This document shows positions 7,075 to 61,145 of a stretch of DNA of 64,000 bases, in pieces. A program made the position numbers and the translations under genes. Below the pieces are notes generated by a model, which saw only the letters and a program-made list of their open reading frames with translations, searched no databases and had not been told where the DNA came from. Position 1 is the stretch's first letter; each line of letters starts with the position of its first letter. Origin of the DNA: Octopus bimaculoides (Eukaryota); contig NC_068990.1 in the NCBI RefSeq assembly GCF_001194135.2, positions 94,385,856-94,449,855 of the forward strand, written 5' to 3'.

Positions 7075-7485
7075 TTTTTATGTGCCACCAGCACGGAAGC
7101 CAGTAAAGGAGGCGCAGGCATCAGCCTCGTTCAGATGGTGCTTTTTATGTGCCACCAGCCCGGACGCCACTCAAGGCGGCGCTGGAGTCAGGCACGTTCA
7201 TATAGTTGTTTTTATGTGCCCCCAGCACGGAAGCCATATTAAAAAAAAACATCTGAACGAGTCTGATGCCAGAGCCGCCTTGAGTTGCGTCCGGGCTGGT
7301 GGCACATAAAAAGCACCATCTGAACGAGGCTGATGCCAGCGCCGCCTTGAGTTGCGTCCGTGCTGGTGGCACATAAAAAGCGGCATCTTAACGAGGCTGA
7401 TGGCAGCGCCGCCTTCAGTTGCGTCCTTGCTGGTGGCACATAAAAAGCACCATCTGAACGAGGCTGATGCCAGTGCATGTTTGAG
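7075..7485. repeat. Minisatellite of ~66-bp units derived from the internal part of an RTE-tail SINE (left block, two orientations)
   Basis: Repeated GGCACATAAAAAGCACCATCTGAACGAGGCTGATGCCAGCGCCGCCTTGAGTTGCGTCC(G/A)TGCTGGT; orientation flips near 7245. Confidence 0.85.
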
Positions 7486-10400
7486 CGTACATATGTATGA
7501 ATGAACGATCGAACGAATGAACGTACATACGTACGAATGTACGGACAAACGAATAAACGTACGAATGTACGAACGAACGAATGTACGTACGTAAGAACGA
7601 ACGTACGTACGTACCTACGAACGAAGGTAGGTACGTACGAACGAACGTATATACGTATGAACGAACGATCGTACGTATGAACAAATGATCGAAGGAAAGA
7701 AAGAACGTACGTACGAACGAATTTACAAACGAACGAACGAACGTAGGTACGTATGTGCGTACGTACGAACGAATGAACGAACGTACGAAAAAACGATCAA
7801 ACGTAGGAACGTACGTACATACGTATAGACGTATGTACGTATGAGTGAACGAACGAACGAACGAACGAACTACGTATGTTCGTACGTACATATGTTGGTA
7901 CGTACATATATATGAATGAACGAAGAAACGAACGTACGTACGTAAGAATGTACGAACGAACGAACGTACATACGAATGACCGAACGAACGACCTAACGAA
8001 CGAACAAAGAAACGGACGAACGGAAGAAAGTATGTACAAACGTACGTACGTACGAACGAACGAACGAATAAAGAAATGAACGTATGAATGTAAGAACGAA
8101 CAAACGAATGAAAGAACGATCGAAAGTAGGAACGAACGAACGATCGAACGAGTGAATGAACGAACGTTCGTATGTATGTACGTACGAACGACCGAACGAA
8201 CAAACGTACGAACGAACGTACGTAAGTAGGTACATATGTATGTACGTACGTACGTACGTACAAACGAACGAACAATCGAACAAATTAACGAACGTACGCA
8301 TGTACGTACGAACGAACGTACGGACGTACGAACGAACGAACAAACGAACGAACGAACGAACGAAGGAAGAAACGAACGAACGTACGCATGTGCGAACGAA
8401 AGAAAGATCGAACGAACAAACAAACGAACGAACGAACGTACGTACATACATCCGTACGTAGGAACGAGCGAACGAACGTACGTACGTACGTAAGAACGAA
8501 CGAAATCAAGGAACGAACGAACTAACGAACGAACGAACGTACGTACGTACGTACATACGTAAGAGTAAACGTATGAACGAACGAACGAAAGAACGAAGTA
8601 ACAAATGAACGTACGTACTTACGTACGTACCAACGAATGAACGAAAGAACGAACGTACGTACGTATGTATGAAAGTACGAACGAACGAAGTTACGTACGT
8701 AAGTACGAACGAACGTACGTACGTACCAACGAAGGAACGAACAATATAATGAGCGAACGAACTAACGAATGAACGTACGCACGTAGGAACGAACGAACGA
8801 ATGTACGCACATATGTACGTACGTAAGTACATACGTTTGAAACAACGAACAAACGAATGAAAGAACGTAAGTACGTACGTATGAACGAAAGAACAGAAGA
8901 AATAACGAACGAACGAACAAACGAAACAAGGAACGAACGATGAAACGAACGAACAAAGGAACAAGAGAACGAACGAACAAACGAACAAAAGTACGTACGT
9001 ACGTACGAACGAAATATCTAACAAACGAACGACCGAAGGTACATACATATAACGAACGAACAAACGTGCGTACGTACCTACGTACGAATGAACGAACGAA
9101 CGAACGAACGTACGTCCGAACGTAGGTACGTACGAACGAATAAAAGAACGAACGTACGTACGTACGTTCGTAATACGTACATAAGAATGTCAAACGAACG
9201 AACGTACGCATGTGCGAACGAAAGAAAGATCGAACGAACACACAAACGAACGTACGTACGAACGAACGTACATACATCCGAACGTAGGAATGATCGAACG
9301 AGCGATAGAACGAACGTGCGTACGTACATACATAAGACTGAACGTACGAACGACCGAACGAACGATTGAACGAACGAACGGACGAACAAAAGAAAGAAGG
9401 AACGAACGATGGAACGAACAAACAAAGGAACAAAAGAACGAAAGAGCTAACGAACGAAAGAGCTAACGAACGAACGACCGAAGGTACGTACATATAACGA
9501 ACGAACGAACGAAAGAACGAACGAACGTGAGTACGTACCTACGTACGTACGAACGAACGAACATACGTCCGAACGTAGGTACGTACGAACGAATAAAAGA
9601 ACGAACGTACGTACGTACGTAGTACGTACATAAGAACGTCAAACGAGCGAACGTACGCATGTGAGAACGAAAGAAAGATCGAACGAACACACAAACGTAC
9701 GTACGAACGAACGTACGTACATACATCCGTACGTAGGAATGATCGAACAAACTAATGAACGAGCGAACTAACGAACGAACGTACTCACATATGTACGTAC
9801 GTACGAAATAACGAACAAACAAGTGAAAGAACGTAAGTACTACGAACGAACGAATGAACGACAGAAGGACGAACGATCGAACAAACGAATTAACTAACAA
9901 AACGTAGGTACATACGTACGAACGAACGAACGACCGTACGTACGAAGGAACAAACGAACGCAAGAACGTACTTAGGTACGTATTTAGGCACGAATGAAAG
10001 AACGTACGTACATACATCCGTACGTAGGGATGATCGAACGAGCGAACGAACGAACGTACGAACGTACATACGTAAGAGTTAACGTACGAGCGAACGTACG
10101 TACGTACGAACGAATGAACGTACGTACGTACGAACGATCGATCGAACGAACGAACGAACGAACGAACGAACGAAAGAACGAAGTAACGAATGAATGTTCG
10201 TACTTACGAACGAACGAACGAAAGATCGAATGTACGTACGTACGTATGTACGTAAGTACGAACGAACGAAAGTACGTACGTACGTATGTAAGTACGAACG
10301 AACGATCGAACGAACGAACGAAAGAACGTACGAACAAACGAACGTAATTACGTACATACGTATATAAGTAAGTACGTACTTACGAATGAACGAACGAACG

Positions 10401-12401
10401 AACGAACGTGCATACGTACCTAAGTACGAACGAACGAACGAACGAACGTAGGTCCGAACGTAGGTACGTACGAACGAATAAAAGAACGAACGCACGAAGG
10501 ACGAACGATCGAACAAACGAATTAACTAACAAACGTAGGTACATACGTACGAACGAACGAACGACCGTACTTTCGTTTGTTCGTTCGTTCGTTCGTACGT
10601 ACCAACGTTCGTTCTTTCGTTCGTTTGTTCCTTCGTATATTCGTTCGTTCGTACGTACATATGTACCTACTTACGTACGTTCATTCGTTCGTTCGATCGT
10701 TCTTTCGTTCCTTTGTTCGTTCGTACATACGTACGTTCATTCTTACGTATGTACGTACGTTCGTTCCTAAATTGCGTTCGTTCGTAAGTACGTACGTTAG
10801 TTCTTTCGTTCGTTCGCACGTTAGTTCTTTCGTTCGTACGTACGTTCGTTTGTTCGTTCAATCGTACGTTCGTTCGTTCGTATTTATGTGCGTACGTTCG
10901 TTAATGTGTTCGTTTGTTCGTTCGTTCGTACGTACATATTTACCTACTTACGTACGTTTGTTCGGTCGTTCGTATGTACAAAATACCTACGTTCGTTCGT
11001 ATGTATATACGTACGTTCATTGTTACGTTTGTTCGTACGTACGTGCGTACGTTCGTTAGTGTGTTTGTTTGTTCGTTCGTTCGTTCGTACGTACATACCT
11101 ACGTTCGTTCATTCGTTCGTTCTTTCGTTCATTTTTTTCGTTCGTACATACGTACGTTCATTTTTTCGTACGTACGTTCGTCCGCTCCTTCGTGTGCTCG
11201 TTCGTTCGTTCGTTCCTACGTACGCAAGTACGTTCGTTCGTTCGTTTGTTCCGTCGTCCGTACGCTTGTTCGTACGTATGTACCTACATTTGTTCGTTAA
11301 TTCGTTCCTTCTTTCGATCATTTGTTCGTTCGCTCGATCTTACGTATGTACTTACGTTCTATCATTCGTTTCTTTCATGTTTCGTACGTACGTACATACG
11401 TTTGTTCGTTCGTTCCTACGTACGTACGTGCGTTCGTTCATTTGTATGTTCGTTCCTTCGTTGGTACGTACGTACGGACGTATTTACGTTCGTTCGTACG
11501 TATGTACTTATACACGTACCTACATACGTTTGTTCGTTCGTTTGTACGTACGTAATTACGTTCGTTCGATCGTACGTTCTTACTTACGTACGTACCTTCG
11601 TTCGTATGTACCTACGTTTGTCAGTTAATTCGTTTGTTCGATCGTTCGTCCTTCTGTCGTTCATTCGTTAATTCTTTCGTTCGTACGTGGTAATTACGTT
11701 CTTTCATTCGTTTGTTCGTTGTTTCGTACGTACGTTCGTTCATTAGTTTGTTCTTTCCTTCGTTGGTACGTACGTACGTACTTATATACGTATCTTCGTT
11801 CGTTCGTAATTATTTTCGTTTGTTCGAACGTACGTAAGTAGGTACATATGTACGTACGAACGAACGAAGAAACGAACAACCTAACGAACGCACGATTGAA
11901 CGAAAGAACGTACGTACGTACGAACTAACAAACGAACGAACGAAAGAAATTTCGAATGAACAGACGAAAGAACGTATGTCCATACGATCAAGCGAACGTG
12001 CGTACATACATCCGTACGTACGACCGAAGGTACGTACATACAAAGTACGGACAAACGAGCGAAAGAATGAACTAACGAATGAACGTACGTACATATGTAC
12101 GTACGACCGAACGAACGAAAGTGCGTACGTACCTACGTACGAATGACCAAACGAACGAAGGTTCGTACGCACCTGCGAACGAAAGAAAAATCGAACGAAC
12201 AAACGAAAGTACGTACCAACGAAAGAACGAACGAACGTATATATATCCGTATGTAGGAACGATCGAACGAACGTACGTACATACGTAAGAGAGAACGTAC
12301 GAACGAACGTACGAAGAAACGAACGTAATTACGTACGTACGAACGAACGTACGTACGTACGTACCAACGAAGGAGCGAACAAACTAATGAACGAACGAAC
12401 G
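7486..12401. repeat. 4.9-kb complex CpG-rich satellite of (GAAC)n/(GTAC)n/(TACG)n tetramers
   Basis: Sequence is almost entirely acga/aacg/tacg/cgta tetramers; the segment ~10571-11825 is in the opposite orientation. Confidence 0.95.
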
Positions 12402-12745
12402 TGAGTTGCGTCCATGCTGGTGGCCCATAAAAAACAGCATCTGAAGGTGGCTGATGCCAGCGCCGCATTCAGTTGCGTCCATGCTGGTGGCACATAAAAA
12501 GTACCATCTGATACCAGCGCCGTCTTAAGTGGCGTCCATGCTGGTGGCACATAAAAAGCACCATCTGAATGAGGTTGATACCAGCGCCGCCTTGAGTTGT
12601 GTCCATGCTGGTGGCACATAAAAAGAACCATCTGAACGAGGCTGATGCCAGCGCCCCCTTGAGTGTCGTCTGTGCTGGTGGCACATAAAAAGCACTATGT
12701 GGTGCTTTTCATGTGTCACCAGCACGGAAGCCAGTCAAGGCGGCA
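12402..12745. repeat. Same ~66-bp minisatellite (right block)
   Basis: Resumes at TGAGTTGCGTCCATGCTGGTGGC...; orientation flips near 12700. Confidence 0.85.
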
Positions 12746-15700
12746 CTGGCATCAGATAATTTTGAATAGGCTGGGGCTGGTTATGCGGAACTGGTGTAGG
12801 ATACAACCGTTAACTCACTTTATTTGCCATAGATGAAATTGTCTTTTCTTTTATCTTCTTCTGAGAAAAATGGTATCAGCTGGTTGAATGTCCTTGCGGA
12901 ACATTTGCGTTTCCTAGCTTACCTTGTAGATTGCCTTCATTACAACTACTGAGCATCATCAATCCTTGACTTCATTGGATGGCAGGTGACACTGCTGTAT
13001 TCCTCCACCCATAGTGTGTCCAAAATCACCATCATCACCAAGCAAGCTTGCCTTTTTACTTGTCAGTGACCCAATCATGCAACAGGTTGTACTGGATTAC
13101 ATGTTCTCAGTAGTAGAAGAGCAACCTGATATTGTTTAACTGACCTTAAATTACCATTTTAAATGCTATCATTATGTAAGTGTAATGTACAGCTAATTTA
13201 AGTCAATTCTAACTCTTGATGTGGAGATATTTTCTAAATTTTCAACCAATTAAATTTTACTAAAAGAAATAAAAAAGTTGCATTATCTCTGAATACGTCT
13301 CTCCTTAGAAAAGTTGATCTTGTAACTCTTGAGGTATACTGCTGCTAACAGAATCCCATAATTAACAACCAAAAATAGAATAATTTTGCAGCTAATATAG
13401 ATTTATTGGTAAAATGTAGCAGGGCTATGATCTGAAGGTTGAGTGTTCTTTATAATTGAAAGAAAAAAAAAATATATATAGTAAAATCTCAATTTTGGAT
13501 CTTTATATATTTGTCTTAGTTCAACTTTTATGCATTTTGAAGTGGTTTCCCTTTTGTTACTAGGTTTCTGTTAAAATCTATTTTATTTGTTTCAGTTCAT
13601 TTTAAAAGAAATGAAGAATTTAATAAAAATGTCTTATTTAGTGTTTGAAACACAAATAAAACTTGAAATTTTGATGGAAGTCTTTAAAACGGGAAGTTTT
13701 ATATTGTGGAACTTAGGGTGGTTTCAGGCAGGTTGTTATCAAAAGGGTTGAAATAGACTGGACTGATTGGTTTTAAAATAGTCTTCATGGCTGTATTTAG
13801 TTAGTCTTAGAGTTGGATCAGTAAAAAATAAAGAATGCAGAAATATTCAAGTTTTTAACTTTGTGTAATTTGGAAAGTAATGCCTGATTTATTATTCTTC
13901 AATCTTAATCTTCAAATCAAGACCATAATCTCTAAATTAATGACACTATTTTAGAATATTTTAACTATACATGTCAGTATTCAAGCATAAACGCTCAACT
14001 GAAAATTATGCTGTAATGTGGGACATAAAAAATTCTAATTAAACAAGAAGCAAACATATTAAACAAATTTCCTAATGAATGAATCATTTCTTGATTTAAC
14101 AATTTATTGGAGTATTGATCTTAGTTTCTATAACCAGACATGCTTTATTTCATTGGTACTACTTACATATAAAACTCCATATAAGGAGAGGCAATACTGA
14201 GGAAAAAAAAAGATTAAAAAAGTTTTTCTGATCATTGAGTAACAGGAAGCATTGTTTGTGAGAGAAACTTCTGACTGACTGAGTTTCATGTTGCTGAAAG
14301 TTGTCAAGTTTAAACTGTTGTTAGTCAACGTTTGCAGGTATGAGGGGACTTGAGAGGGTTGTATAGAAAAGGTTGAGGTGGAAAGAGAAGTAGATGAGTG
14401 GGGAGGGGGAACAGTGGTGGATGTACCAGACCCCCCCGTAAGCTTGCAAGAACAGAGGCAATAGAAAAGGTAAAAGTTTTTAAGTAACTGCTCCTGATTC
14501 TATGATACAAACTTCCTGTTTTTAAGTGACTCTAAATTAAAACTGTTCGTCAAAATTTCATGTTCAATTTAAGATAAAAAGAACAGTTTAATAATGGCAT
14601 TATGTTAAAAAAATTCTTCATTTTCAAAATTAGTTGAAACAAAAGCAGTGCATTTCAAAGGAAATCTGGTTGATAAGAAAGGTTAAAGAATCTGTCGGAT
14701 AGTTTTGGACGAATTGTGCAAGAAGGATAACAAGAAGAAAAAAAAGGTACAAATATTCAGTTGAATAATTTTATTTTGTTACCATAATTTAAAAGAAATA
14801 ACTTTGGAGAGAGTTAGATTACAATTGAGCATGTTTATTATCCTTTGGGATAATGATAGTAACGTTTTAAGTGAAATGTTTTTAGATGCGAGAAAATCTG
14901 ATTTAGGACTTGTGACTTTTTTTTCTCTTCCCCCAAATCATTTTGTGAAGTTTAAATGAAGTGAATAGAAATACTACAACTACTACTACTACTGCTGCTG
15001 CTGCTGTTGGTGTTTCAAGAGAGCAATAAGATTCTGGCCTTGAGCAAGTCACTTTATTCTGTCATGGTAGTTTCACTTTATAAAAAGAGTGAATTGGTTT
15101 GCATTTAAATCTAAATTGATACTAAATTCTCCATTAAGATTTAAAAGCGTGGTTCTTAACCGGGATAGTAGCACCCCTTTGGAGGGTGAATGTGAGCTGA
15201 CAAGGAGGTGGTGCTGGTTGCTTTAGGGGGGTGGGGGTGATTTTTCTTAGAAATAATTTGTTGCTGAGCTACAAAGGTTAAAACCACAGATTTAAAGTAA
15301 ATAAAATGCAGGAATGACAACTGTTTAAAGGGCAGAGATATTAAATGTTGATATCTGGTTTTTAAAGGGGAGGCTAAACTAAAAGATACTTCTAGAAAGT
15401 TCTGCTTTCTTAATGAAGCTAATAAGTCATTGTAGAAAAGAAAAATGAAAAATGCAATCTAATTGAGTGATTAGAATACTCTCTTGATTAACGAGCTACA
15501 TGCATGTACATCGTGCATTGTTTTCTTTGGCATATTCTTTGATAGGACTGTCTCATTAGTCCACTTCCACATAACCATAAAAACTTGAAGCATTTTCTGG
15601 TGCTACTGGGAGGAGTGGATACCAATAATAGCAGTTAAATGACTAAGAGCAATAGAGTGATCTAGAAATAGAAATATTTATTTTCCAAACAAAATATTTC

Positions 15701-21573: not shown

Positions 21574-21692
21574 TCATTCATCATACTCATTCACAAGAAA
21601 GTGGAATACAAACATAGCTTTCTTTTCTGTGTCTGCCTGACAATTCCTCTCCGACTTGAGTGGACGTAAGAACAGGTGGCCAAAAATGGAGG
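21574..21692 (-). CDS. OCRL: OCRL terminal exon (end of RhoGAP-like domain)
   Basis: ctatttccag|CC; (A)SIFGHLFLRPLKSERNCQADTEKKAMFVFHFLVNEYDE*. Confidence 0.9.
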
Positions 21693-24924: not shown

Positions 24925-25052
24925 TTGTCGAGAAAAATTGTAGTTGTTGCTGACTTGAAGGCATTTGTGGTAAACATTACAAGGAATCACAGGTTCTGGC
25001 AGACACCTCAGGAACAATATCAAAGCACTGGTCACAGAATGGATACTACCAG
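24925..25052 (-). CDS. OCRL: OCRL exon (RhoGAP-like), downstream of the AT-AG minor intron
   Basis: (P)GSIHSVTSALILFLRCLPEPVIPCNVYHKCLQVSNNYNFSRQ; donor CAA|gtaaga. Confidence 0.92.
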
Positions 25053-26211
25053 CTACATTGCAGTCAAAGAAATATTATTTTAAAACATGTTTAACTTCTC
25101 TACAATTTGGCATGGCTGATGACTTAGTGGCCTACAAAAGAAGAGAGACTTGAAACAGCCTCAAAAACTATCTTTTTTTATCCATTTCTATTTCCCATCC
25201 AGAGACTTCCAGCCTGGCTCTTTCAATAATTTAATTATCAAGAGATTTGTTATACACAAGTTATAAATTTCAATATCTCAAGATGTTTAAATATTGTATT
25301 TGCAAAGGAAAGGGATTTCTCCAGAATCTATGACTCAGAAAAAAAAAAAAACAGGCATTTGTAAAGAGTGTATGAAACTGATTAAAATTGTTAAATCTAA
25401 GAGGAGCAAGTTGACATGGGCAGTAAGTTCCTGGAAAACCACAGTTTGGTTACATGTCCATAAAAATGCTATTTACTTTACTCTTGCCCTTGGCATGAAA
25501 GTCCCAATTTCAATCCTTTGATGTCTATTGCACCAGTACAATACAATAAAATATATTTTTCATTTCATTTAAAACCTGTGCGATTCCACAATACAGATGG
25601 TGAGAAATGAAGATGCAGGTCCTCGTATCTAATTAAGATAGGTGTGGCTGAGAAGCTGGTTTTCTGACCATCTGGGCAAGTGTCTTTTACTATAGCTTGG
25701 ACTCACCAAAGCATTGTGAGTGAATTTAGTAGACAGAAACTTTGAGAAGACCATTGTGCATGTAGGTTGAGTGGGGTTAGTACCATATGATACTAATAAA
25801 CAAGTATCCTTGTCATACAAGCAATATCTTCCATGAAAAACATGGTCCCGGGGAATCATAATACTTTCGCTGGAAACAGGAAGGGCATCCAGTGGTAGAA
25901 AAGGATCTACCTCAACTAATTCCATCTGATGTATGCAAGCATTGAAAGGTGAACATTAAAATAATGATGATAAGAATACAAAACAATGCAATATGGTTCT
26001 TTGCTTTAACATTTTTGTGATGATTTTAATGTCAACAAAGAAAAACAGAATAGGCTTTGAATTTCCTTCTGAAGACAATTTGAAAAATTTCAGTCAACCA
26101 CTATACAGCTATTGCATGGAATGGTAATAACATCCCATTTTATTCAATTAACATTTGATAGGAAAATTAACAAAAAGATTAATGGGATTAGGGTATTAAT
26201 TAAAAGGATAT
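25053..26211 (-). other. OCRL: U12-type (minor spliceosome) intron with AT-AG termini, 1159 nt
   Basis: 5' site C|ATATCCTTTT (26211-26202); branch TTCTTTGAC (25071-25063), then tgcaatgtAG|CT. Splicing gives ...PEKI-PGSIHSV, matching vertebrate PETIPGSNHSV. Confidence 0.88.
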
Positions 26212-26296
26212 GAATCTTCTCAGGAGCACCAGCATCAAGACAATCTCGAATTTGGTAAATTTCAGTATTGAGGCCATCTTGTTTGAAAAGGTCTTC
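26212..26296 (-). CDS. OCRL: OCRL exon (RhoGAP-like, arginine-finger region)
   Basis: ttttttacag|GAA; EDLFKQDGLNTEIYQIRDCLDAGAPEKI+C, then ATATCCTTT. Confidence 0.92.
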
Positions 26297-27144
26297 CTGT
26301 AAAAAAGATGAGAATTTTTCAACTGAATATTTTAACCAATTTTTTATTACATCATACATTTGGCATCATAAATTCACAAGTGATTAGACTGCAGCTTCGC
26401 TGGAGCATGGCCATGGAGAATTTTATTTGAATGAATTGACACAGTACTTATTCTATCAATCTCTTTTGCTGAACTCTAAGTTACGGGCATGTAAACACAC
26501 CAACATCGGTTGTCAAGTGGTGGACAAAGATACACACATACACATAATACATATATACACATGTATGATAGGCTTCTTTCAATTTCCGTCTACCAAATCC
26601 ACTCATGAGGCTTTGGTCAGCCTGACACTGATAGAAGACACTTGGCCAAAGTGCCATGGTGTGGGACTGAATCCAAACCATGTGGGTGAGAAGCAAACTT
26701 CTTACCATGTAGGCAGATCTGTAGTTCACTTGACAAATGTATGTATAACCCTTCGTGGGCCGGTGGAGGTCCCTTGGGACCCCAGCAAATTTTAAAAGTT
26801 ATGCAACTTTTACATTTTTTTTATTTAAATGATTTTATATCTCATGACTTTTATTGTCAATAGTTTATGTAGGCACATACAAATTTGGAGTTAAAAATTC
26901 CCAGTCCTATGGATGTTATAGCATCAAATATGGTCATTGGGGTCCAACTGGACCCCATTGGCCTTCTGTGAAATTATTCTTTCCTATTCCTTTTTCAGAT
27001 ATTCCGATGAACGACAAATCAATGTATTTTTTCTTTTATTCTTTTTGTTTTATTTTATATTTAGTGCTTTATGTATAATTTATAAAACTATAAAAAAGTG
27101 CTAAATTTCTTGTTCTGTACCATGCACTCACACATATATACATC

Positions 27145-27318
27145 ATCATCATCATCATCATCGTTTAACGTCCGCTTTCCATGCTAGCATGGGTTGGACG
27201 ATTTGACTGAGGACTGGTGAAACCGGATGGCAACACCAGGCTCCAATCTAAATTTGGCAGAGTTTCTACAGCTGGATGCCCTTCCTAACGCCAACCATTC
27301 AGAGAGTGTAGTAGGTGC
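27145..27318. mobile_element. Young RTE-tail SINE-like repeat with (CAT)n tail
   Basis: catcatc-gtttaacgtccgctttccatgctagcatgggttggacg...ggatgcccttcctaacgccaacc; near-identical to copies at 34400-34575 and 58630-58800. Confidence 0.85.
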
Positions 27319-27674
27319 AAACAAATATTACTTTATGGATAGTGTAGAAATGTGCAAAAATAAAAGGGGACCCTAATGGCCTTTAGTGTAATTCCAACTC
27401 TGCCAGCCTACGAAGGGTCAATACAAACTTGGGCTGACCTTGAGAGTGAAATTATTTGATAGACAGAAACTGTATGGAAACCAGTTGTGTGTGTGTGAGA
27501 CCCCATTGTCTCTGTGGCACAAAAACAGTGACGGTATTTATGTGTCGCAGTTCAGGGGCTTCATTTTGTTTGAAGACTAATGGAACGAAAATAGATTAGG
27601 CCTAAACAACTCTCATTCAACCCATGCCAGCATAGAAAAAGAAAATGCAGAAACAATGAAGAAATATACAGGCA

Positions 27675-28060
27675 CAGGTGTGGCTGCTGACCCAAGCAAA
27701 GCTGTGGCGTTAAAAGGTTGCTTTGCAACTGTGTGGTTTTGGGTTCAGTCCCACTGCACAGTACCTTGAGCAAATGTCTTCAGGGCTGACCAGTGCCTTC
27801 TAAATGAATTTGGGAGACAGGAACTGTGTAAAAGCCAGTCGATACACACACACACACGTGTGAGAGAGATTGTGGTTGTCCCCACCACACCCAACAATGC
27901 CTGACATCAATAGTGGTTTATGTCCCCATAACTTAGCAGTTCAGCAAAAGGAACTAACAGAATACCAAATAAGTCCAGGGGATGATTTGCTCAACTAGAA
28001 CCCTTCAAAGTGGTGCTCCAGCATGGTCATAAGCCAATGACTGAAACAAAGAAAAGCTAA
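27675..28060 (+). mobile_element. tRNA-related SINE (family 2) with internal (CA/GT)n
   Basis: ggtgtggctg...gggttcagtcccactgc..caccttgagcaa.tgtcttc...gacagaaactg consensus; related copies at ~16260-16330, 17160-17330, 19790-20170, 25640-25830, 26560-26710, 31760-31900, 38690-38810, 58340-58480, 62870-63170. Confidence 0.7.
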
Positions 28061-28558
28061 ATGATAAGATTATACGAAGTATAAATGTATACAAAGTGTT
28101 TGCTTTGTGGAAGTTTACATTTTATACAAAAAAAAAACAACATTTTATAGGAATTAGCTTTGAATCGAAATTCACATCTGTTTACCTCAAGAAAATAGAA
28201 TGGCAAAATTGAAAGCTTTCTTATTCAGCAGGACATCTCTTCAAAGCTGTATGGTGATGTAATGAATGGATGGATAAAAAAAATGTAGTCAGACTGTAAT
28301 ATATGGATTGTCTGATGTATCTAGGAGTTGTCATTACCTACCTTGGTTTAAGTTTTGACTATGTGAAATCATTGGCTCTATATTTATCGGATAGAAATCT
28401 GATATTTGAAAATGGATTATTAGAGCAAATTATTGTATTTTCAGTTAAGAAGAGTAGTAATTGCCATAGCATGGTTTGAACTGACAACTCCTTTGTTGTA
28501 AATCTTATAAATTACAGTCAATGAGTCATGAAAAAAGCTGCCAGGATAGCTTTCTTAC

Positions 28559-30177: not shown

Positions 30178-32081
30178 GTATATAAGTTAAAGAAGAAACA
30201 ATGTCACCAAAACTGTCAAGAGTATACGTCAAGGGTGTCACGAAAGGGTAGACTGTTACCTTTACAAGGGAGGCAGGACAACTAGTTAGGAAAAGATATG
30301 CAAAAATCACGATGGTATACAATACATCTTTCTCTTTTTTGCAGATTTAACACATGATGGCATCTCCTGCAGTGGATTTTGGTAAAATGGAAGCACGGGC
30401 GGTCATGAAGTTCCTCTTTTTGCAAGATGAAGGAAGATATGTGACTTTGGCTTCGAATTGGTAGACCAACCACCTTACTCTTCTGACTTGGCCCCTTCCG
30501 ATTATCCCCTCTTTCCACAACTGAAGAAACATTTCAAAGCAAAGAAATTTCACTCCAACTCAGAAGTGATTGCTGCTACAGAGGTCTGGTTGGAGGCCCG
30601 ACCTCCTGAATTCTTTTTACAGGGCTTAGAAAAACTGAAGGACCACTGCAATAAGTATATGAATCTGAAAGGGGAATATGTTGCATAAAGTCATAATCAA
30701 TTGATTCTTGTGTTTTCTTTTACCCAAAACCAGAAACTTCCCAGCAACCCCACCCTGTACAAGGGAGACATCATTGATTTCTTGCTCTGTTTCTCGTTTC
30801 TGCTTTGTAATGGAATCATTACAGAATTGTGGTTTTTGAAGCTGAAAATTTCCAACAGGTGTTAGGAGTTATTTTCCCCTATTTGTCTCCTTAGTATAAT
30901 GAGTAGTTATAGGGTTAGGGGTCAAACAAACGGCTCTCTTTTCATATCTTCTTTCCTCTCTTCCTTTGTCTCTCTTTGGAATCTCTTCCAGTATTTGATG
31001 AAAGACTATCTTGAAGAATGTTTATTGTTCTATAACGTTTTTTACCTTCATTGAGCGTCAACCTAATAATATTAACTGTGAATGTCCCTTGGACTTCTGT
31101 CGTTTTTTGTATTTAAGTTGCTTTATATCTATCAACACACACCTTTGTCTATCTTTCATTCTTATATAACTATTAACATTATAATGTGTCTTTGAAAGAC
31201 AAATAATAAGTAGTTGTAACATACTTGGTCTTTTTTAAAGATATTGAAAATGTAGAGAAAAGCTGTTTTCCAAGGGGGAACTGATACCATGCAATAAAAC
31301 TAACACAATGCATCAAGTAATTATACTCTACCAACTAACTAAACCCTTGGGAAATGGAAACTGAAATAAGCCTCTCTGTGTGTGTGTGTTTACATTTGTG
31401 CATCTGGAAATTGTTTCATTGTGGGTGGGGACATTGCTGTTTATATGTCAAGATTACTGCCACATGCCTAAAACAATCAATAAACCAACATGTATGATGC
31501 ACACTGGCACATACACACACACATGTGCAAGCATGTGTAATGTCCACTTTCTCATGCTTGCATGGTTCAGACAGAATATCTACAGTTGCATGCACTTCCT
31601 GTTGCCAACCTTCACCTATTTCTAAGCAAAGTAATATTTCACCATGACCAAGGACTGGAAACAAACAACCTTGCTGGTAGAGAGTGATGCTCATTTACAA
31701 TTAGCATGTGATGTCTAGACAAAGGTACACACAAACAAACACACATATATATGACATGGTTTGATACAGTTTTTGTCAGCCAAATTCACAAGGTAGCTGA
31801 CCTGGAGCTCTAGTAAAAGACACTTGCTCAAAATACTGTGCAGCAGGGGCTGAACTTAAAACTATGTGGTTGCCAAGTGAACTTCTTAACCACATGATGA
31901 TGTCTGCGCTGGTATCTAGAAAAAATTTGCTTACAATATCTGTAAGTTTTGGCTAGACCTATAAAATCTGTTTATTAAAATACCATTGATAATTGGCTAT
32001 AACTTGACTAACATATTATTGTTTTTCTATTTATTACTACCATGTTATGTTGTCCAACAATAAAAGCTATTAAAAGGATAT
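30178..32081 (-). other. OCRL: U12-type (minor spliceosome) intron with AT-AC termini, 1904 nt
   Basis: 5' site TTT|ATATCCTTTT (32081-32072); branch TTCTTTAAC (30194-30186), then ttatatAC|ATC. Splicing gives GGKDCF-ITVSGNF, matching vertebrate GKDYFLTISGNY. Confidence 0.92.
30345..30760 (+). mobile_element. Internally deleted mariner (Tc1/mariner) remnant inside the AT-AC intron
   Basis: MEARAVMKFLFLQ (N-terminal HTH start) fused to QPPYSSDLAPSDYPLFPQLKKHF...KGEYVA* (YSPDLAPSD motif). Right end ccagaaacttcccagcaacccc..gta is TIR-like; no left TIR seen. Confidence 0.85.
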
Positions 32082-41148: not shown

Positions 41149-41593
41149 AACTGTTATTATTGTTTGGTCCCAATCAAATTTCAGTTGTGACCATTTTGAG
41201 TTTATTGTCAGATATAAAGAATTCCCCTTCTTTTTCTTAAGACTTAGCAAAGGGAGGAAAGGTAGCATTAATGATTTTTCCAAGAGCTCTGTGACTGGAG
41301 GGAGAAAGTTATTTTCAGATGGGAAACCTGACCAAGAAGCATGCAACNNNNNNNNNNNNNNNNNNNNNNNNNNNNNNNNNNNTACTACAAGCACGCAAGG
41401 GATCAGGTGGTGGAGTCAAGCAGAGCAATAGATCAAGTCTGTACTCGGGTCTTGGACAACATTATCCTTTCTACTTTTTTTAAGAGAGAAGGGTGTGATT
41501 TGAGGGAGATATGGCTGCCACATATGTTTAGTGACTGTGTATGATGTAAGAGAGAAAATCTGGTGATGGAAATGAATTCTAAGTAAATCCTAC

Positions 41594-42261: not shown

Positions 42262-43139
42262 TCACTTGGTTTGCTGGGTCTTCTCATATACAACATATTG
42301 CCAAAGGTCTCGGTTGCTTGTCATCGCCTTCGTGAGGCCCAAAGTTTGAAGGTCATGCTTCACCATCTCATCCCATGTCTTCCTGGGCCTACCTCTCCCA
42401 CAGTTTCGCTCCACTGTTGGGGTGTGACACCTTTTTGTGCAGCTCTCCTCATCCATATGCAACACATTATCATACCAGTGCAGTCGTCTCTCTTGCACAC
42501 ATCTGATGCTTCTTAGGTCCAATTTTTCTCTCAGGGCACTTACACACTATTGTGTGTGCACACTGACATTACACATCCAGCAGAGCATACTAGCTTCATT
42601 TCTTGCAAGCTTACGCATGTTCTCAGCCATGTAGCATGGCTGTTCGCACACATGCGTCATACAGTCTACCTTTTACTCTGAGTGAAAGGCCCTTTGTCAC
42701 CAGCAGAAGTAGGAACTCTCTGAACTTTGCCCAGGCTATTCTTATTCTAGTAGCTACACTTTCAGAGCATTCACCCCAGCTACTGACTTGGTCACCTAGG
42801 TAACGGAAGCTATCAACTACTTCTAGTTTTTCTCCCTGGCATATGATGGAAGCTGTTTTCTGCACATTTTCAGTGTTTATTGCCCCTGAGCATTTACCAC
42901 ACACAAAAACTATCTTCTCAGTTAGCCTTCCTTTGATGTTGCTGCACCTCTTATGTGTCCAGAGCTTGCACTGGGTACATCTTATGGAGTTTCTACCTGA
43001 AGGGATTTGTGATTTGTCTGCCTTCCTACTTACTAAGACCTTGGTTTTTGCTCGATTCACTGTAAAGTCCTTCGATTCTAATCCTTGCTTCCACACCTGA
43101 AACTTTAGTTCTGATAGTGACTCAGCTATTAGAGCAAGG
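42262..43139 (-). mobile_element. RTE-clade LINE fragment
   Basis: WKQGLESK...NSIRCTQCKLWTHKRCS...VDSFRYLGDQ...RVKGRLYDACVRTAMLHG and GRGRPRKTWDEMVKHDL. Confidence 0.9.
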
Positions 43140-43199
43140 TCAACAGTATAGAGGAGCTCCCATGGGAATCCTGTCTTGAATTCCTCTGTTATTGATCGT

Positions 43200-53811: not shown

Positions 53812-56800
53812 CTGGAGTGGAAAAAGGGAGGGAAATAATAAATAAATAAAAACAGGAGTTAGACATGTCTTTAGAACAAACAGATTCCACTTTCTTCCTC
53901 GTGTAATAACATTCCCTCTTCACATTTAGCTCCAAAATACTCATCAGTTTCCACAAAAGTTGATATATTCTTTGTTCTTACCTGTATTAATTGTAGGCAG
54001 GTGAAGCAGGTGATCCGACAACTCTTACCCCTTCCTCCACCTCACTAAAAATATTTCATGCATGCAAACATTATCACTGATAAAGAACTTGGTCTGTAAC
54101 AATTTTACTTTTCTAAAATTGAAGGTGGTTTTAGGCTAATTTTTAGGTGCTGATTTCAAATAATAGACAACACACCATATTTAAATTGCCTTCTAATGTT
54201 GTTTGTGCATTTTGTATGATGCACAGAAGGCATGATGCTGTGGAATTTTCTGAGATAAAATCTTTTCATAGACTTGTGTTAACAAACACTTATATGAGAG
54301 CAAGACAAATATTGTTACTATACAATATAGGCCAGAAATGGGGAAAATAGCTTATCATCATTATTTAAAAAAAATTTTTTTTTTTTGCATTTTAGGAAAA
54401 TTATCAGTGATACGAATTCGTTATTTCAAACTTTTCTGTTCATTTAATACTGAAGTAGTATTTACAAGTCTATTTAAAGATGAAAGTCAATTTCTGACAA
54501 AGCCCACATGCCACAACCTCCCACTTACTATATCACAGTGAAAGAATCAGAGAATGAGACTATAAGTTAACAGGCTACTAATAAAGACAATACTATATAG
54601 CATATAATACAGGTTTTGCAATGAAGGAATAGTTATAAACTATATTCAAGTACTTCTTATGAAGTCGAAACTGTAAATTTTGTAAGGTAACAAGAGTGGG
54701 AGAGCAGTTTGAAATTTATTTTTCTTGAGAGTTTTTCTAAGATGGCTTGCATATAAAACTAGCCTCGATAACTACAGGAATGTATTTCCTTATTTCTGTA
54801 ATAGTTGGTTGTGTTTTTGAGTACAATGAAGGCCCAAGGAAAACTAACTTCTACATTTTCTAGCTGTTTGTTTAACTTGTAACCTAATATGGCCAGTACC
54901 AGTGGGTGTAGGATGTGCAAGTACTGCATAGATGTCTTGCTACATCTGTGGCAATGCAATTTCAGATTTTGTTACAAGAAAATATTTTACAAATTTTGGA
55001 ATGAAATTGGCCAATCAAACCAAAACCAAGTCCTTCTCACTAATCACCCAAATTTCCATTGTAAATCAGAAGTAATTAACTAAAAGAAACAAGATGGGAT
55101 TTGGTGTAGCAACAGTCTGGGAAGAACTGACAAATCATATTTGAGATTGCTTTTTTGTTTGATCTATATTTAGGGACATATCTCCAAGACCCTAATGAAG
55201 AGACATTACCAACTAGTCATTGTGCTAAAGTGCTTGTTGTATTTTTTAAGTTAGATGCCATCAATAAACTGCATGCTGTACATTGGAAGGAAGCACTGAA
55301 GATGAAATCTACTGATACAAGAGGAGCTAAACGCTTCACCCAGTTTAAATCTTTCAAGACTCAACAGAATTCCTGGGAACTGGGTTAAATCAAAATTACC
55401 TGCGAGTTCCAGGAACAACATTTAACTTTCATTGGTACAAAGAAAAAAAAAAAAAAGATCTGATGCAGCTCTTTTAGTAAAGGAGATGATTTGTAAAATT
55501 TTGGAATGAACCAAACAAATGACAGATTTTTATAAAAAAGGTTAAAATTAAATCTAAAGTGTGTTTTTGCTGAGCAATGGAAATGTATTTGGTTCTGCCA
55601 GGCCATTCAATACATGAAACCATGAATGTGGTATTGGAAAAGGCTTAAATACTTCCAACACAACTGAATGATATGTGGAGATCAAAAAGTGATTTTCACG
55701 TTGTTTAATCAACAAAACAGTTACACTAGATTTCATGGGGTGGGAGAATTGTGCTCATGGGACAACTGAGTTAAAAGAGACCATTGCGTGAGAAAAGAAT
55801 GGTCGGAAAGAAGAGTTTTTGAGGTTAGAAAGTAGAATATTATGAACATCCCCCTTAGTAAACAGTGAACATATCTTGTTCCCAGCATTTCATATTAAAT
55901 TAGATTTGACAAAAACATTAATGTATTAGCTAAGGTAGATGATTCAAATATCTATCGAGAAACTGAAGGTAGTTATCTTTGATGGGTTTAACAATGAAAG
56001 ATGAGCTATTTATGGGTTTACTTAAACCTGTTAAAAGAAAATACTCAGGTAGCTTTTTTTGGTAACAACAAATCCCGAAATTACAATGTGATAAATAACT
56101 TCCAGAAGCTAGGGTATGAATATTAAAGTGTATTAAAGTGTATTAAAGGGTATGAATATTAAAGTGTATTGCCTGCACAACCAATTGGGCTACTTTTTTT
56201 TTGCCATTTTGGGGGTAAAGAGCAAGGTGACCATTTCCATTAACTCATGAAAAAAACTATAGACGTAAGCTACCAGGAATGATGAAATACAAATACAATG
56301 ACAGACTAATTATCAATGTTTTATAATCCAAGAAGAGAAAGATGCTTCCTTAATTCTTAAACAGTTCACTTGCCATTCCAACCTTGTTTTTATATTTAGT
56401 CTACATTTTCAGTTGCTAAATTAACATGAAATAGAGAGAATTTGTTGCCTAACTGATGCATCTCTTGCCACAATACTATTTTATTATATGTGAGTTATTT
56501 CAGTGACATTTGATGTATTTGACTGTTTTATTGTGGTTGGATAGTGTAAGAATAACTACAGATGTGTAACAATTTAATAAATTAAAACAATAAAATGTAT
56601 ATTTCATAAAAGTGGTACCTAAGTATAACATGGAAAAGATTAGATTTTCCATAAAGCAGTTAAAATCACTCTCTTTATAATTATAGATTATATCCTTTAC
56701 ACTGTATTCCTAAAATTGAAAAAAAAAGAAGGAAAAAACTTGATGTGATACATCATCATCATCATCATCATCATCATTTAGCATCCGTTGATGATGACAG

Positions 56801-58905: not shown

Positions 58906-59759
58906 GGTGAAAGATATAAACACCAATGAGAAAGCCAGTTATAAACTAGTTANNNNNNNNNNNNNNNNNNNNNNNNNNNNNNNNNNNNNNNNNNNNNNNN
59001 NNNNNNNNNNNNNNNNNNNNNNNNNNNNNNNNNNNNNNNNNNNNNNNNNNNNNNNNNNNNNNNNNNNNNNNNNNNNNNNNNNNNNNNNNNNNNNNNNNNN
59101 NNNNNNNNNNNNNNNNNNNNNNNNNNNNNNNNNNNNNNNNNNNNNNNNNNNNNNNNNNNNNNNNNNNNNNNNNNNNNNNNNNNNNNNNNNNNNNNNNNNN
59201 NNNNNNNNNNNNNNNNNNNNNNNNNNNNNNNNNNNNNNNNNNNNNNNNNNNNNNNNNNNNNNNNNNNNNNNNNNNNNNNNNNNNNNNNNNNNNNNNNNNN
59301 NNNNNNNNNNNNNNNNNNNNNNNNNNNNNNNNNNNNNNNNNNNNNNNNNNNNNNNNNNNNNNNNNNNNNNNNNNNNNNNNNNNNNNNNNNNNNNNNNNNN
59401 NNNNNNNNNNNNNNNNNNNNNNNNNNNNNNNNNNNNNNNNNNNNNNNNNNNNNNNNNNNNNNNNNNNNNNNNNNNNNNNNNNNNNNNNNNNNNNNNNNNN
59501 NNNNNNNNNNNNNNNNNNNNNNNNNNNNNNNNNNNNNNNNNNNNNNNNNNNNNNNATGATAGGAAGTCTTAAATATGCAGGGAAAAACAGAAAGAAAGGA
59601 AAAAAAAAAAGAATGGTAATTGGTGTTTGGGACTTCCTGGTGATGTGTGTTTGAGTGTGTAAACAAATATCATCATCATCATCATTATCTAGCCAAGCTT
59701 AATCCACACATAATATCCATCTTTAATCCACACATGGTATCCATCTTTGTCCTCTATTA

Positions 59760-60719: not shown

Positions 60720-61145
60720 GGTATTTTTTATGTGCCACNNNNNNNNNNTCAATCTGTTTTTGGGTATTTTTTATGTGCCACCAGCATTGGAGCCAGTCAA
60801 GCAGCACTGGCATCAACCATGCTCGGATGGTGCCTTTTATGTGTCACTGGCACAGGTGCCAATCAGGCGGCACTGGCACCAACCACGCTTGAATGATGCT
60901 TTTTACATGTTACTGGCACAGGAGCCAGCCAGGTGGCACTGGTATTGACCACATTTGAATGATGCTTTTATGTGCCACTGGCATGAGTGCCATTCAGGTG
61001 GCACTTGTATGGACCACGCTTGAATAGTGCTTTTTACATGCCACTGGCATAGAAACCAGTCAGGCGGCACTAGCATTGGTTACGCTCAAGTGGTGCTTTA
61101 CACATGCCACTGGCACAGGTGCTAGTCGGGTGGCACTGACTTTGG
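60720..61145. repeat. ~55-bp minisatellite from the internal part of the RTE-tail SINE
   Basis: About 7 copies of (gg)tgcttttacatgccactggcac...cagg(c/t)ggcactgg. Confidence 0.75.

What the first reader, a model, noticed from the sequence alone, without database searches (positions are those of the whole stretch)
25053..26211. Minor-spliceosome intron with rare AT-AG termini in OCRL
Seen: the exon ending EDLFKQDG...PEKI has no usable GT donor and is followed by a perfect U12 5' site, ATATCCTTT. The next exon is preceded by a U12-like branch (TTCTTTGAC) and, 8 nt later, AG rather than AC. Joining at AT...AG gives C+CT = Pro and restores PEKI-PGSIHSV (vertebrate PETIPGSNHSV). Known: U12 introns are mostly GT-AG or AT-AC, and AT-AG is a rare documented subtype. 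Inference: this could be an intermediate in AT-AC to GT-AG subtype switching, and standard gene predictors will probably mis-model this junction.
Basis: partly seen in the sequence, partly recalled or inferred. Interest (0 to 1): 0.78.

Follow-up and report, generated by a model that had tools for sequence, protein, structure and literature searches.

The report
Octopus OCRL minor intron, AT–AG ends
An octopus OCRL intron removed by the rare "minor" splicing machinery really does start with AT and end with AG, but it is a one-base (G→A) variant of an ancient, conserved GT–AG minor intron, so it is a real but ordinary example of a known phenomenon.

Summary
On the minus strand, intron 26211..25053 (1,159 nt, phase 1) of the Octopus bimaculoides OCRL gene starts ATATCCTTT. 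It has a U12 branch site, TTCTTTGAC, 8 nt before a terminal AG. AT…AG is the only join that reproduces the NCBI protein (…PEKI|PGSIHSV…) and aligns without a gap to human OCRL.

The evolutionary reading is not supported. The orthologous intron has the same position and phase in O. vulgaris, Argonauta, scallop, abalone, amphioxus, elephant-shark INPP5B and a coral. In all seven it is a U12-type GT–AG intron (GTATCC… plus a TCCTTRAC-like branch site). O. vulgaris differs from the window at the 5' site only by G versus A at +1. AT–AG here is therefore a recent derivative of GT–AG, not an AT–AC→GT–AG intermediate.

All of this is known biology. OCRL and INPP5B are listed minor-intron genes. AT–AG is the commonest non-canonical U12 subtype. 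GT–AG→AT–AG changes are documented (ACTR10, XPO4, SCN10A).

The mis-modelling prediction held for the 2015 gene model, which used a cryptic GT and dropped six residues. It did not hold for NCBI Gnomon.

Untested: independent reads at 26211 and spliced RNA from this species.

The parts
26212..26296 (-). Upstream OCRL exon (EDLFKQDG…DAGAPEKI plus the first base of the Pro codon); ends in phase 1.
   Evidence: exact match to P0001 residues 785-813. Its own upstream intron is GT-AG (28558..26297).
25053..26211 (-). The U12-type intron with AT–AG termini: 1,159 nt, phase 1.
   Evidence: the only split that reproduces the annotated protein; the orthologous intron is U12-type in 7 other taxa.
26203..26211 (-). 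U12-type 5' splice site ATATCCTTT. The A at 26211 (+1) is the single base that differs from the GT–AG orthologues.
   Evidence: The 12-mer ttc|ATATCCTTT is identical to the curated 5'SS of the human/mouse SCN8A and TMEM231 minor introns. O. vulgaris has ttc|GTATCCTTTTAATTAATA, identical from +2 to +18.
25063..25071 (-). U12-type branch-point sequence TTCTTTGAC; presumed branch A at 25064, 11 nt upstream of the last intron base.
   Evidence: Identical in O. vulgaris; TTCCTTGAC at the same spacing in Argonauta. The spacing fits the 11-13 nt optimum quoted in PMC3584512.
25053..25054 (-). 3' terminal AG.
   Evidence: Same AG in O. vulgaris. No in-frame AC is available at a workable distance from the branch site (read directly).
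24925..25052 (-). Downstream OCRL exon (…PGSIHSVTSALILFLRCLPEPVIPC…FSRQ), part of the RhoGAP-like domain.
26228..26229 (-). Cryptic in-frame GT (G|GTGCTC) inside the upstream exon. The 2015 gene model used it, replacing GAPEKIP with A.
   Evidence: the reconstructed join is contained in P0128.
30178..32081 (-). Second U12-type intron of the same gene: canonical AT–AC, phase 0, 1,904 nt. It runs ttt|ATATCCTTTTAAT … TTCTTTAACttatatAC, and its first 13 nt are identical to those of the AT–AG intron.
   Evidence: Conserved as AT–AC in Argonauta and Haliotis.

Best explanation
This is a bona fide U12-dependent (minor-spliceosome) intron of the Octopus bimaculoides OCRL gene. It is the orthologue of a U12-type GT–AG intron that has occupied this exact position and phase since before the cnidarian–bilaterian split.

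In the O. bimaculoides lineage, or at least in the sequenced genome, a single G→A substitution at intron position +1 turned GT–AG into AT–AG.

Inferred mechanism, from established knowledge of minor splicing:
- U11 snRNP recognises ATATCCTTT, where both A and G are natural first bases.
- U12 snRNA pairs with TTCTTTGAC. The C→T departure from consensus would keep a G·U wobble.
- The 3' site is chosen by its distance of about 11-12 nt from the branch A, so the same AG is used as in the relatives. This yields …PEKI|PGSIHSV….

The mixed A…G termini are tolerated by the minor spliceosome, probably with lower efficiency than the ancestral G…G pair.

Shown: sequence anatomy, uniqueness of the join, orthology and polarity.
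Inferred: actual use of the junction in RNA, U12 dependence, and efficiency.
For: - Anatomy.
- Gap-free alignment of the join to human OCRL.
- NCBI O. bimaculoides and O. sinensis models all carry the join.
- The 5'SS 12-mer is identical to curated mammalian minor-intron 5'SS, and the BPS is close to GMFB's GTTTCTTTAACT.
- Orthologues at the same position and phase, all GTATCC… plus a TCCTTRAC-like BPS 6-13 nt before AG: O. vulgaris (92% identical intron, G at +1), Argonauta, Argopecten, Haliotis and Branchiostoma, Callorhinchus INPP5B, Orbicella.
- OCRL and INPP5B are catalogued minor-intron genes in mouse and human.
- AT–AG U12 introns exist naturally, and several are human AT–AG versus mouse GT–AG (XPO4, ACTR10, SCN10A). 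ACTR10's AT–AG is described as recently derived from GT–AG.
- O. sinensis is among the species with conserved minor introns in the pan-eukaryotic survey.
Against: - No RNA read or independent genomic read from O. bimaculoides could be examined. The A at 26211 rests on one assembly, and the use of the junction rests on Gnomon models.
- Reviews say AT–AG combinations 'appear to be disfavored' and splice poorly. A +1 change in an essential, conserved gene is therefore somewhat unexpected.
- The branch site has one mismatch to consensus.
Confidence: 0.77

Rival explanations
1. Base-call or assembly error, or a heterozygous or rare allele. The true or common O. bimaculoides sequence has G at 26211, and the intron is an ordinary U12-type GT–AG intron like that of every relative.
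For: All 7 orthologues have G at +1, including congeneric O. vulgaris, whose 5' site is otherwise identical from +2 to +18. The window is a draft assembly with five N gaps. The site is expected to be under purifying selection.
Against: The two octopus introns differ at about 8% of aligned sites (1240/1343 identical). Real substitutions are therefore far commoner than typical consensus errors. No gap or low-complexity run lies near 26211. A is a natural first base for U12 introns, and GT–AG→AT–AG replacements are documented in mammals.
Confidence: 0.15
2. The genomic A is real, but it is deaminated to inosine (read as G) on the pre-mRNA by ADAR. The spliceosome would then see an effective GU–AG U12-type intron, as reported for the human NUP210 and CRYZL1 AT–AG introns.
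For: Parada 2014 lists U12-like AT–AG sites edited to GT–AG. From general knowledge, coleoid cephalopods edit RNA at exceptionally high levels.
Against: The 400 nt around the 5' site fold no better than shuffles (z = 0.02), and the splice site is unpaired in the MFE structure. The only complementary segments are 12-15 nt at 80-83%, no better than 18 other pairs found in the same 1.5 kb. The neighbours C-A-U are not the preferred ADAR context (general knowledge). AT–AG U12 introns do not need editing to splice (discussion).
Confidence: 0.04
3. One reading: the intron was ancestrally AT–AC, and AT–AG is a surviving intermediate on the way to GT–AG.
For: Sheth 2006 proposed AT–AG as a viable intermediate of AT–AC/GT–AG switching. 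Another U12 intron of this same gene family (intron 1) does show AT–AC in scallop and amphioxus versus GT–AG in abalone and Argonauta.
Against: At this intron, GT–AG is found in O. vulgaris, Argonauta, two other molluscs, two chordates and a coral. An ancestral A at +1 would need many independent A→G changes, against a single G→A.
Confidence: 0.02
4. The AT site is not used. The major spliceosome uses the cryptic GT at 26229 with the same AG, giving a protein six residues shorter (…DCLDAAGSIHSV…), as in the 2015 gene model.
For: That join is in frame and was predicted by one pipeline.
Against: G|GTGCTC matches the U2 consensus poorly beyond +3. The 3' end has a U12 branch site close to the AG and no polypyrimidine tract. 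The deleted GAPEKIP segment is conserved from coral to human. Transcript-derived decapodiform proteins P0003/P0004 keep the full segment.
Confidence: 0.02

Closest known systems
Mammalian U12-type AT–AG introns that are GT–AG in a sister lineage (ACTR10, XPO4, SCN10A; Sheth 2006 PMC1557818 Table 3; Parada 2014 PMC4176328 Fig. 2B)
   Same: A U12-type 5' site and branch site with A at +1 and G at the last position. They differ from a GT–AG orthologue by the single +1 base. For ACTR10 the AT–AG state is explicitly described as recently derived from GT–AG.
   Different: Different genes and phyla. Those cases have EST or RNA-seq support, whereas the octopus junction is supported here only by gene models and conservation.
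The catalogued minor introns of vertebrate OCRL and INPP5B (MIDB, Olthof 2019 PMC6717393; INPP5B AT–AG conserved in human and mouse, Sheth 2006)
   Same: Same gene family. The elephant-shark INPP5B intron at exactly this position is U12-type, and mouse Ocrl and Inpp5b each have a minor intron near the 3' end. The family is already known to contain an AT–AG minor intron.
   Different: I could not establish which INPP5B intron is the published AT–AG one. The listed 5'SS ATC|ATATCCTTC fits the first (PH-domain) intron better than this one, but that is inference only. At this position the shark orthologue is GT–AG.
A-type (AT–AN) minor introns dependent on CENATAC (de Wolf 2021, PMC8280824)
   Same: By its termini the octopus intron belongs to the A-type class, which includes AT–AG. 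In human cells that class is spliced less efficiently and depends on CENATAC.
   Different: Nothing is known about CENATAC or intron-retention levels in octopus. This is an expectation, not a result.
A-to-I edited AT–AG splice sites (NUP210, CRYZL1; Parada 2014)
   Same: U12-like AT–AG termini, in an organism known for heavy editing.
   Different: No duplex is predicted around the octopus 5' site, and no RNA data are available.

Membership tests
U12-type (minor-spliceosome) intron | Extended 5' splice site [A/G]TATCCTT starting at +1 | tested here: met
   ATATCCTTT at 26211..26203. The 12-mer is identical to the MIDB 5'SS of SCN8A and TMEM231.
U12-type (minor-spliceosome) intron | Branch-point sequence TTCCTTRAC-like, with the branch A about 10-15 nt (optimum 11-13) from the 3' splice site | tested here: met
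   TTCTTTGAC at 25071..25063, A at 25064, 11 nt before the last intron base. There is one C→T mismatch. Comparable CTTTAAC/CTTTGAC sites are accepted in MIDB. Spacing rule from PMC3584512.
U12-type (minor-spliceosome) intron | No polypyrimidine tract between branch site and 3' splice site | tested here: met
   The last 40 nt are AAACATGTTTTAAAATAATATTTCTTTGACTGCAATGTAG. The neighbouring GT–AG introns have T/C-rich 3' ends.
U12-type (minor-spliceosome) intron | Orthologous introns in other species are U12-type (positional conservation) | tested here: met
   Same position and phase, with GTATCC… plus a BPS, in O. vulgaris, Argonauta, Argopecten (weaker BPS), Haliotis, Branchiostoma, Callorhinchus INPP5B and Orbicella.
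U12-type (minor-spliceosome) intron | Excision depends on U11/U12/U4atac/U6atac snRNPs | not testable with these tools
   Needs knock-down or an in vitro splicing assay.
AT–AG subtype of U12-type introns | A at +1 and G at the last intron position in the genome | tested here: met
   Window bases 26211 (A) and 25053 (G). This rests on a single assembly.
AT–AG subtype of U12-type introns | The AT…AG junction is used in mature mRNA of this species | not tested
   Only indirect evidence: NCBI Gnomon models carry the join. No O. bimaculoides transcript contig was available; the 90% cluster of P0001 contains only one Logan fragment, from another exon.
Intermediate of AT–AC → GT–AG subtype switching (Burge/Sheth model) | Ancestral state of this intron is AT–AC (or at least A at +1) | tested here: not met
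   7 of 7 orthologues, including a cnidarian outgroup, are GT–AG.
OCRL/INPP5B inositol polyphosphate 5-phosphatase gene | Domain architecture PH – 5-phosphatase – ASH – RhoGAP-like, with exact identity to an annotated orthologue | tested here: met
   Pfam PF16776, PF03372/PF22669, PF21310 and PF00620 on the hits. Window exons equal residues 165-932 of XP_052827352.1.

The most novel reading that the evidence does not exclude
The genomic A at +1 is real and is converted to inosine on the pre-mRNA. Excision of this conserved minor intron in O. bimaculoides would then depend on A-to-I editing (an effective IU–AG intron), coupling cephalopod hyper-editing to minor splicing of an essential phosphoinositide phosphatase gene.
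Probability: 0.04. Interest if true: 0.65.

Novelty: new member of a known kind. Interest (0 to 1): 0.3.

Why it matters
The practical value is mainly in annotation.
- Non-GT minor introns in this gene broke or distorted several published cephalopod and bivalve gene models. Resources built on the 2015 octopus annotation probably record this intron as a false GT–AG intron.
- In evolutionary terms it is a clean, well-polarised invertebrate example of a U12-type GT–AG intron acquiring AT–AG termini by one substitution. This runs opposite to the textbook AT–AC→GT–AG direction, at an intron conserved from corals to vertebrates.
- If the A is fixed, comparing retention of this intron in O. bimaculoides and O. 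vulgaris would measure the cost of mixed termini in vivo.

None of this changes current understanding of minor splicing.

Tried and rejected
- homologue search with the 71-aa joined peptide found no candidates because the query was too short for the word index. It was replaced by a 617-aa composite.
- exact look-up of P0001 was not on record, since only the longest isoform is kept.
- the O. sinensis, Acanthosepion pharaonis, Chiloscyllium and Limulus loci could not be fetched because the gene ranges exceed 100 kb. As a result no decapodiform cephalopod, vertebrate OCRL or arthropod genomic sequence was examined.
- folding and inverted-repeat search for an ADAR duplex around the 5' site gave nothing above chance.
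- raw motif counts in the window are not significant on their own. The extra matches at 56690 (+) and 14682 (-) have no exon context and were dismissed as chance.
- I ran no further search on hunting Logan fragments. The 90% cluster of the octopus protein holds only one Logan member, from another exon, and the short query had already found no fragment sharing words with these two exons.
- I considered and rejected an alternative 3' site. There is no AC at a workable distance from the branch A, and the next AG (25047-25046) would shift the frame.
- I could not decide from the literature which mammalian INPP5B intron is the published AT–AG one.

Full report
**What is in the sequence**

The finding lies on the minus strand. 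An exon runs from 26296 to 26212. It encodes EDLFKQDGLNTEIYQIRDCLDAGAPEKI and ends with one extra C, so the intron is in phase 1.

The next bases, from 26211 downwards, are ATATCCTTTTAATTAATACCC. Near the other end the sequence reads …AAATAATATTTCTTTGACtgcaatgtAG|CTGGTAGTATCC. The motif TTCTTTGAC is at 25071..25063, the AG is at 25054..25053, and the next exon starts at 25052.

Joining 26212 to 25052 gives C+CT = Pro and the peptide …DAGAPEKIPGSIHSVTSALILF…. This peptide aligns without a gap to the human OCRL ASH–RhoGAP crystal-structure sequences (PETIPGSNHSV; E = 7e-17).

**Which gene and organism**

A composite of the exon peptides retrieves inositol polyphosphate 5-phosphatase OCRL/INPP5B proteins from across animals. 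The best hit is NCBI Octopus bimaculoides OCRL isoform X2 (XP_052827352.1, P0001).

An exact k-mer mapping shows that the window's exons translate to residues 165-932 of that protein with no mismatch. The window is therefore O. bimaculoides OCRL, minus strand, from about 53.8 kb to the stop codon at 21,577.

I resolved every junction by asking which split reproduces the protein. All the other introns in the window can be GT–AG, with two exceptions:
- The target intron, for which AT–AG at 26211/25053 is the only solution.
- A second intron at 32081..30178. This one is a textbook AT–AC U12 intron (ttt|ATATCCTTTTAAT … TTCTTTAACttatatAC).

**Is it more than chance?**

Motif counts alone are not significant. 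RTATCCTTT occurs 3 times in the window against 1.7 expected, and TTCYTTRAC occurs 3 times against 4.3 expected.

The signal is positional. Two of the three hits of each motif lie exactly at the 5' ends, or 6-8 nt upstream of the 3' ends, of these two OCRL introns, on the coding strand and in frame. The leftover hits have no exon context.

The 12-mer ttc|ATATCCTTT is identical to the curated 5' splice sites of the SCN8A and TMEM231 minor introns. The branch site resembles accepted ones such as GMFB's GTTTCTTTAACT. The branch A at 25064 is 11 nt from the last intron base, within the 11-13 nt optimum quoted by Turunen et al.. There is no polypyrimidine tract.

**Orthologues and polarity**

I fetched genomic loci for relatives and resolved their junctions in the same way. 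At the same amino-acid position and the same phase 1, the intron reads as follows.

| Species | 5' end | 3' end |
|---|---|---|
| O. vulgaris | gattc\|GTATCCTTTTAATTAATA… | …TTTCTTTGACtgtaatgtAG |
| Argonauta hians | gatac\|GTATCCTAGAG… | …TTCCTTGACcagaacatAG |
| Argopecten irradians | tac\|GTATCCTTTCA… | …CAG |
| Haliotis cracherodii | ttc\|GTATCCTTGCC… | …CTCCTTGACctctcccAG |
| Branchiostoma lanceolatum | tac\|GTATCCTTACT… | …ACCCTTAACccctgaccCAG |
| Callorhinchus milii INPP5B | tgt\|GTATCCTTCTC… | …TTTCCTTAACcctttgtgctcacAG |
| Orbicella faveolata (coral) | tgc\|GTATCCTTCTG… | …GTTCCTTGACgtgttccaAG |

All seven are U12-type GT–AG. This is an ancient minor intron that predates the cnidarian–bilaterian split, and its ancestral termini are GT–AG.

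The O. vulgaris intron is 92% identical to the window's (1240/1343 aligned bases). Its 5' site is identical from +2 to +18, and its branch site and AG are the same. The only difference in the splice signals is G versus A at +1. By parsimony, one G→A change occurred on the O. bimaculoides branch.

The change runs from GT–AG to AT–AG.

**What is already known**

- Olthof et al. 2019 (MIDB) list OCRL and INPP5B as minor-intron genes in mouse and human. Each has two minor introns in mouse, one at the 5' end and one near the 3' end.
- Sheth et al. 2006 counted AT–AG as the most frequent non-canonical U12 subtype (11 human, 8 mouse). They listed INPP5B among genes with a conserved AT–AG U12 intron, and XPO4, ACTR10 and SCN10A as AT–AG in human but GT–AG in mouse. 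They had already suggested that AT–AG may be a viable switching intermediate.
- Parada et al. 2014 describe the ACTR10 AT–AG site as recently derived from GT–AG in primates. They also report A-to-I editing of the +1 A in the U12-like NUP210 and CRYZL1 AT–AG introns.
- MIDB counts for human are 555 GT–AG, 172 AT–AC and 15 AT–AG.
- Turunen et al. note that AT–AG combinations appear disfavoured and probably splice poorly.
- de Wolf et al. place AT–AG in the CENATAC-dependent, less efficient A-type class.

The octopus intron is thus a new instance of a well-described kind.

**Gene models**

The prediction that predictors would stumble is partly borne out.
- The original 2015 O. bimaculoides model (UniRef A0A0L8GSZ9, P0128) reads …DCLDAAGSIHSV…. 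I reproduced this exactly by splicing from the cryptic GT at 26229 (G|GTGCTC) to the same AG. It replaces the conserved GAPEKIP with a single A.
- All NCBI Gnomon models carry the AT–AG join. These are XP_014778567.1, the two current O. bimaculoides isoforms, and the O. sinensis isoforms.
- The other U12 intron caused more damage. The O. vulgaris models stop at …GGKDCFISF and the gene is split in two. The Acanthosepion model skips the flanking exons. The scallop Gnomon model seems shifted by 5 nt.

**Mechanism and rivals**

The best explanation is minor-spliceosome excision using the inherited 5' site, branch site and AG, with a tolerated A at +1. The anatomy, the uniqueness of the join, the orthology and the polarity are shown. 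RNA usage, U12 dependence and efficiency are inferred.

The main rival is that the A is an assembly error or a heterozygous allele. I give this about 0.15. The site is expected to be constrained and every relative has G. However, neutral divergence between the two octopuses is about 8%, far above assembly error rates, and the local sequence is clean.

The editing hypothesis gets about 0.04. The region folds no better than shuffled sequence (z = 0.02), the 5' site is unpaired, and only chance-level complementary segments exist.

**Limits**

- No O. bimaculoides reads or transcripts were accessible. The 90% cluster of the protein contains only one Logan fragment, from another exon.
- Several loci were too long to fetch: O. 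sinensis, cuttlefish, shark OCRL and Limulus.
- I could not determine which mammalian INPP5B intron is the published AT–AG one. The listed 5' site ATC|ATATCCTTC fits the first (PH-domain) intron better, but this is inference.

**Verdict**

The feature is real and correctly described. The gene and the intron class are right. The evolutionary interpretation is reversed, and the phenomenon is already documented elsewhere. Interest is low to moderate.

Noticed in passing
window 30178-32081 (minus strand): A second U12-type intron in the same gene: canonical AT–AC, phase 0, between …GGKDCFI and TVSGNF…. Its first 13 nt (ATATCCTTTTAAT) are identical to those of the AT–AG intron. It is AT–AC in Argonauta and Haliotis and AT–AG in the coral Orbicella (L007: ttt|ATATCCTTGGA…TTTTCTTAACggtagacAG). 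It is absent from amphioxus and elephant-shark INPP5B.
   Followed up: partly
L001 (Argonauta) first intron; L003, L004, L005 first introns; outside the window in octopus: A third U12-type intron, after …EKC(L/V)I in the PH domain, phase 0. It shows genuine subtype switching: AT–AC in scallop and amphioxus, and GT–AG (GTATCCTTTT / GTATCTTTT) in Argonauta and abalone. Mollusc OCRL therefore carries three minor introns. The human OCRL 5'SS listed in MIDB (GCC|GTATCCGCC) probably belongs to this intron.
   Followed up: partly
P0122, P0125, P0123 (O. vulgaris, L002); P0005 (Acanthosepion); P0007 (Argopecten, L003): Published gene models break at the AT–AC intron. O. vulgaris OCRL is split into two genes, with the upstream models ending …GGKDCFISF by reading into the intron. 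The cuttlefish model drops the exons flanking that intron. The scallop Gnomon model has no AT–AC solution and reads FFIS where an AT–AC join would give FFIT, which suggests a 5-nt misplacement.
   Followed up: partly
window ~7200-12700: About 5.5 kb of simple or tandem repeat that is open in all three minus-strand frames (endless FVRSFVRTYVRS… and NERTNERT… 'ORFs'), with extreme AT skew (0.55 at 8-10 kb). It lies downstream of the OCRL stop codon.
   Followed up: no
window ~42265-43198 (minus strand), inside the intron between the exons at 44.2 kb and 41.7 kb: Long stop-free stretches (191 and 94 aa) that look like a decayed retroelement insertion in the OCRL intron (e.g. …CTQCKLWTHKRCSNIKGRL…, …RGRPRKTWDEMVKHDL…).
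   Followed up: no
window 41348-41382, 58953-59555, 60739-60748, 61290-61922, 62613-62712: Five runs of N, so the window comes from a gapped draft scaffold. OCRL exons for residues 1-164 are not in the window; the O. sinensis gene spans about 163 kb.
   Followed up: no
window 56690-56698 (+) and 14682-14690 (-): One extra ATATCCTTT and one extra TTCTTTAAC with no exon context. Judged to be chance matches.
   Followed up: yes
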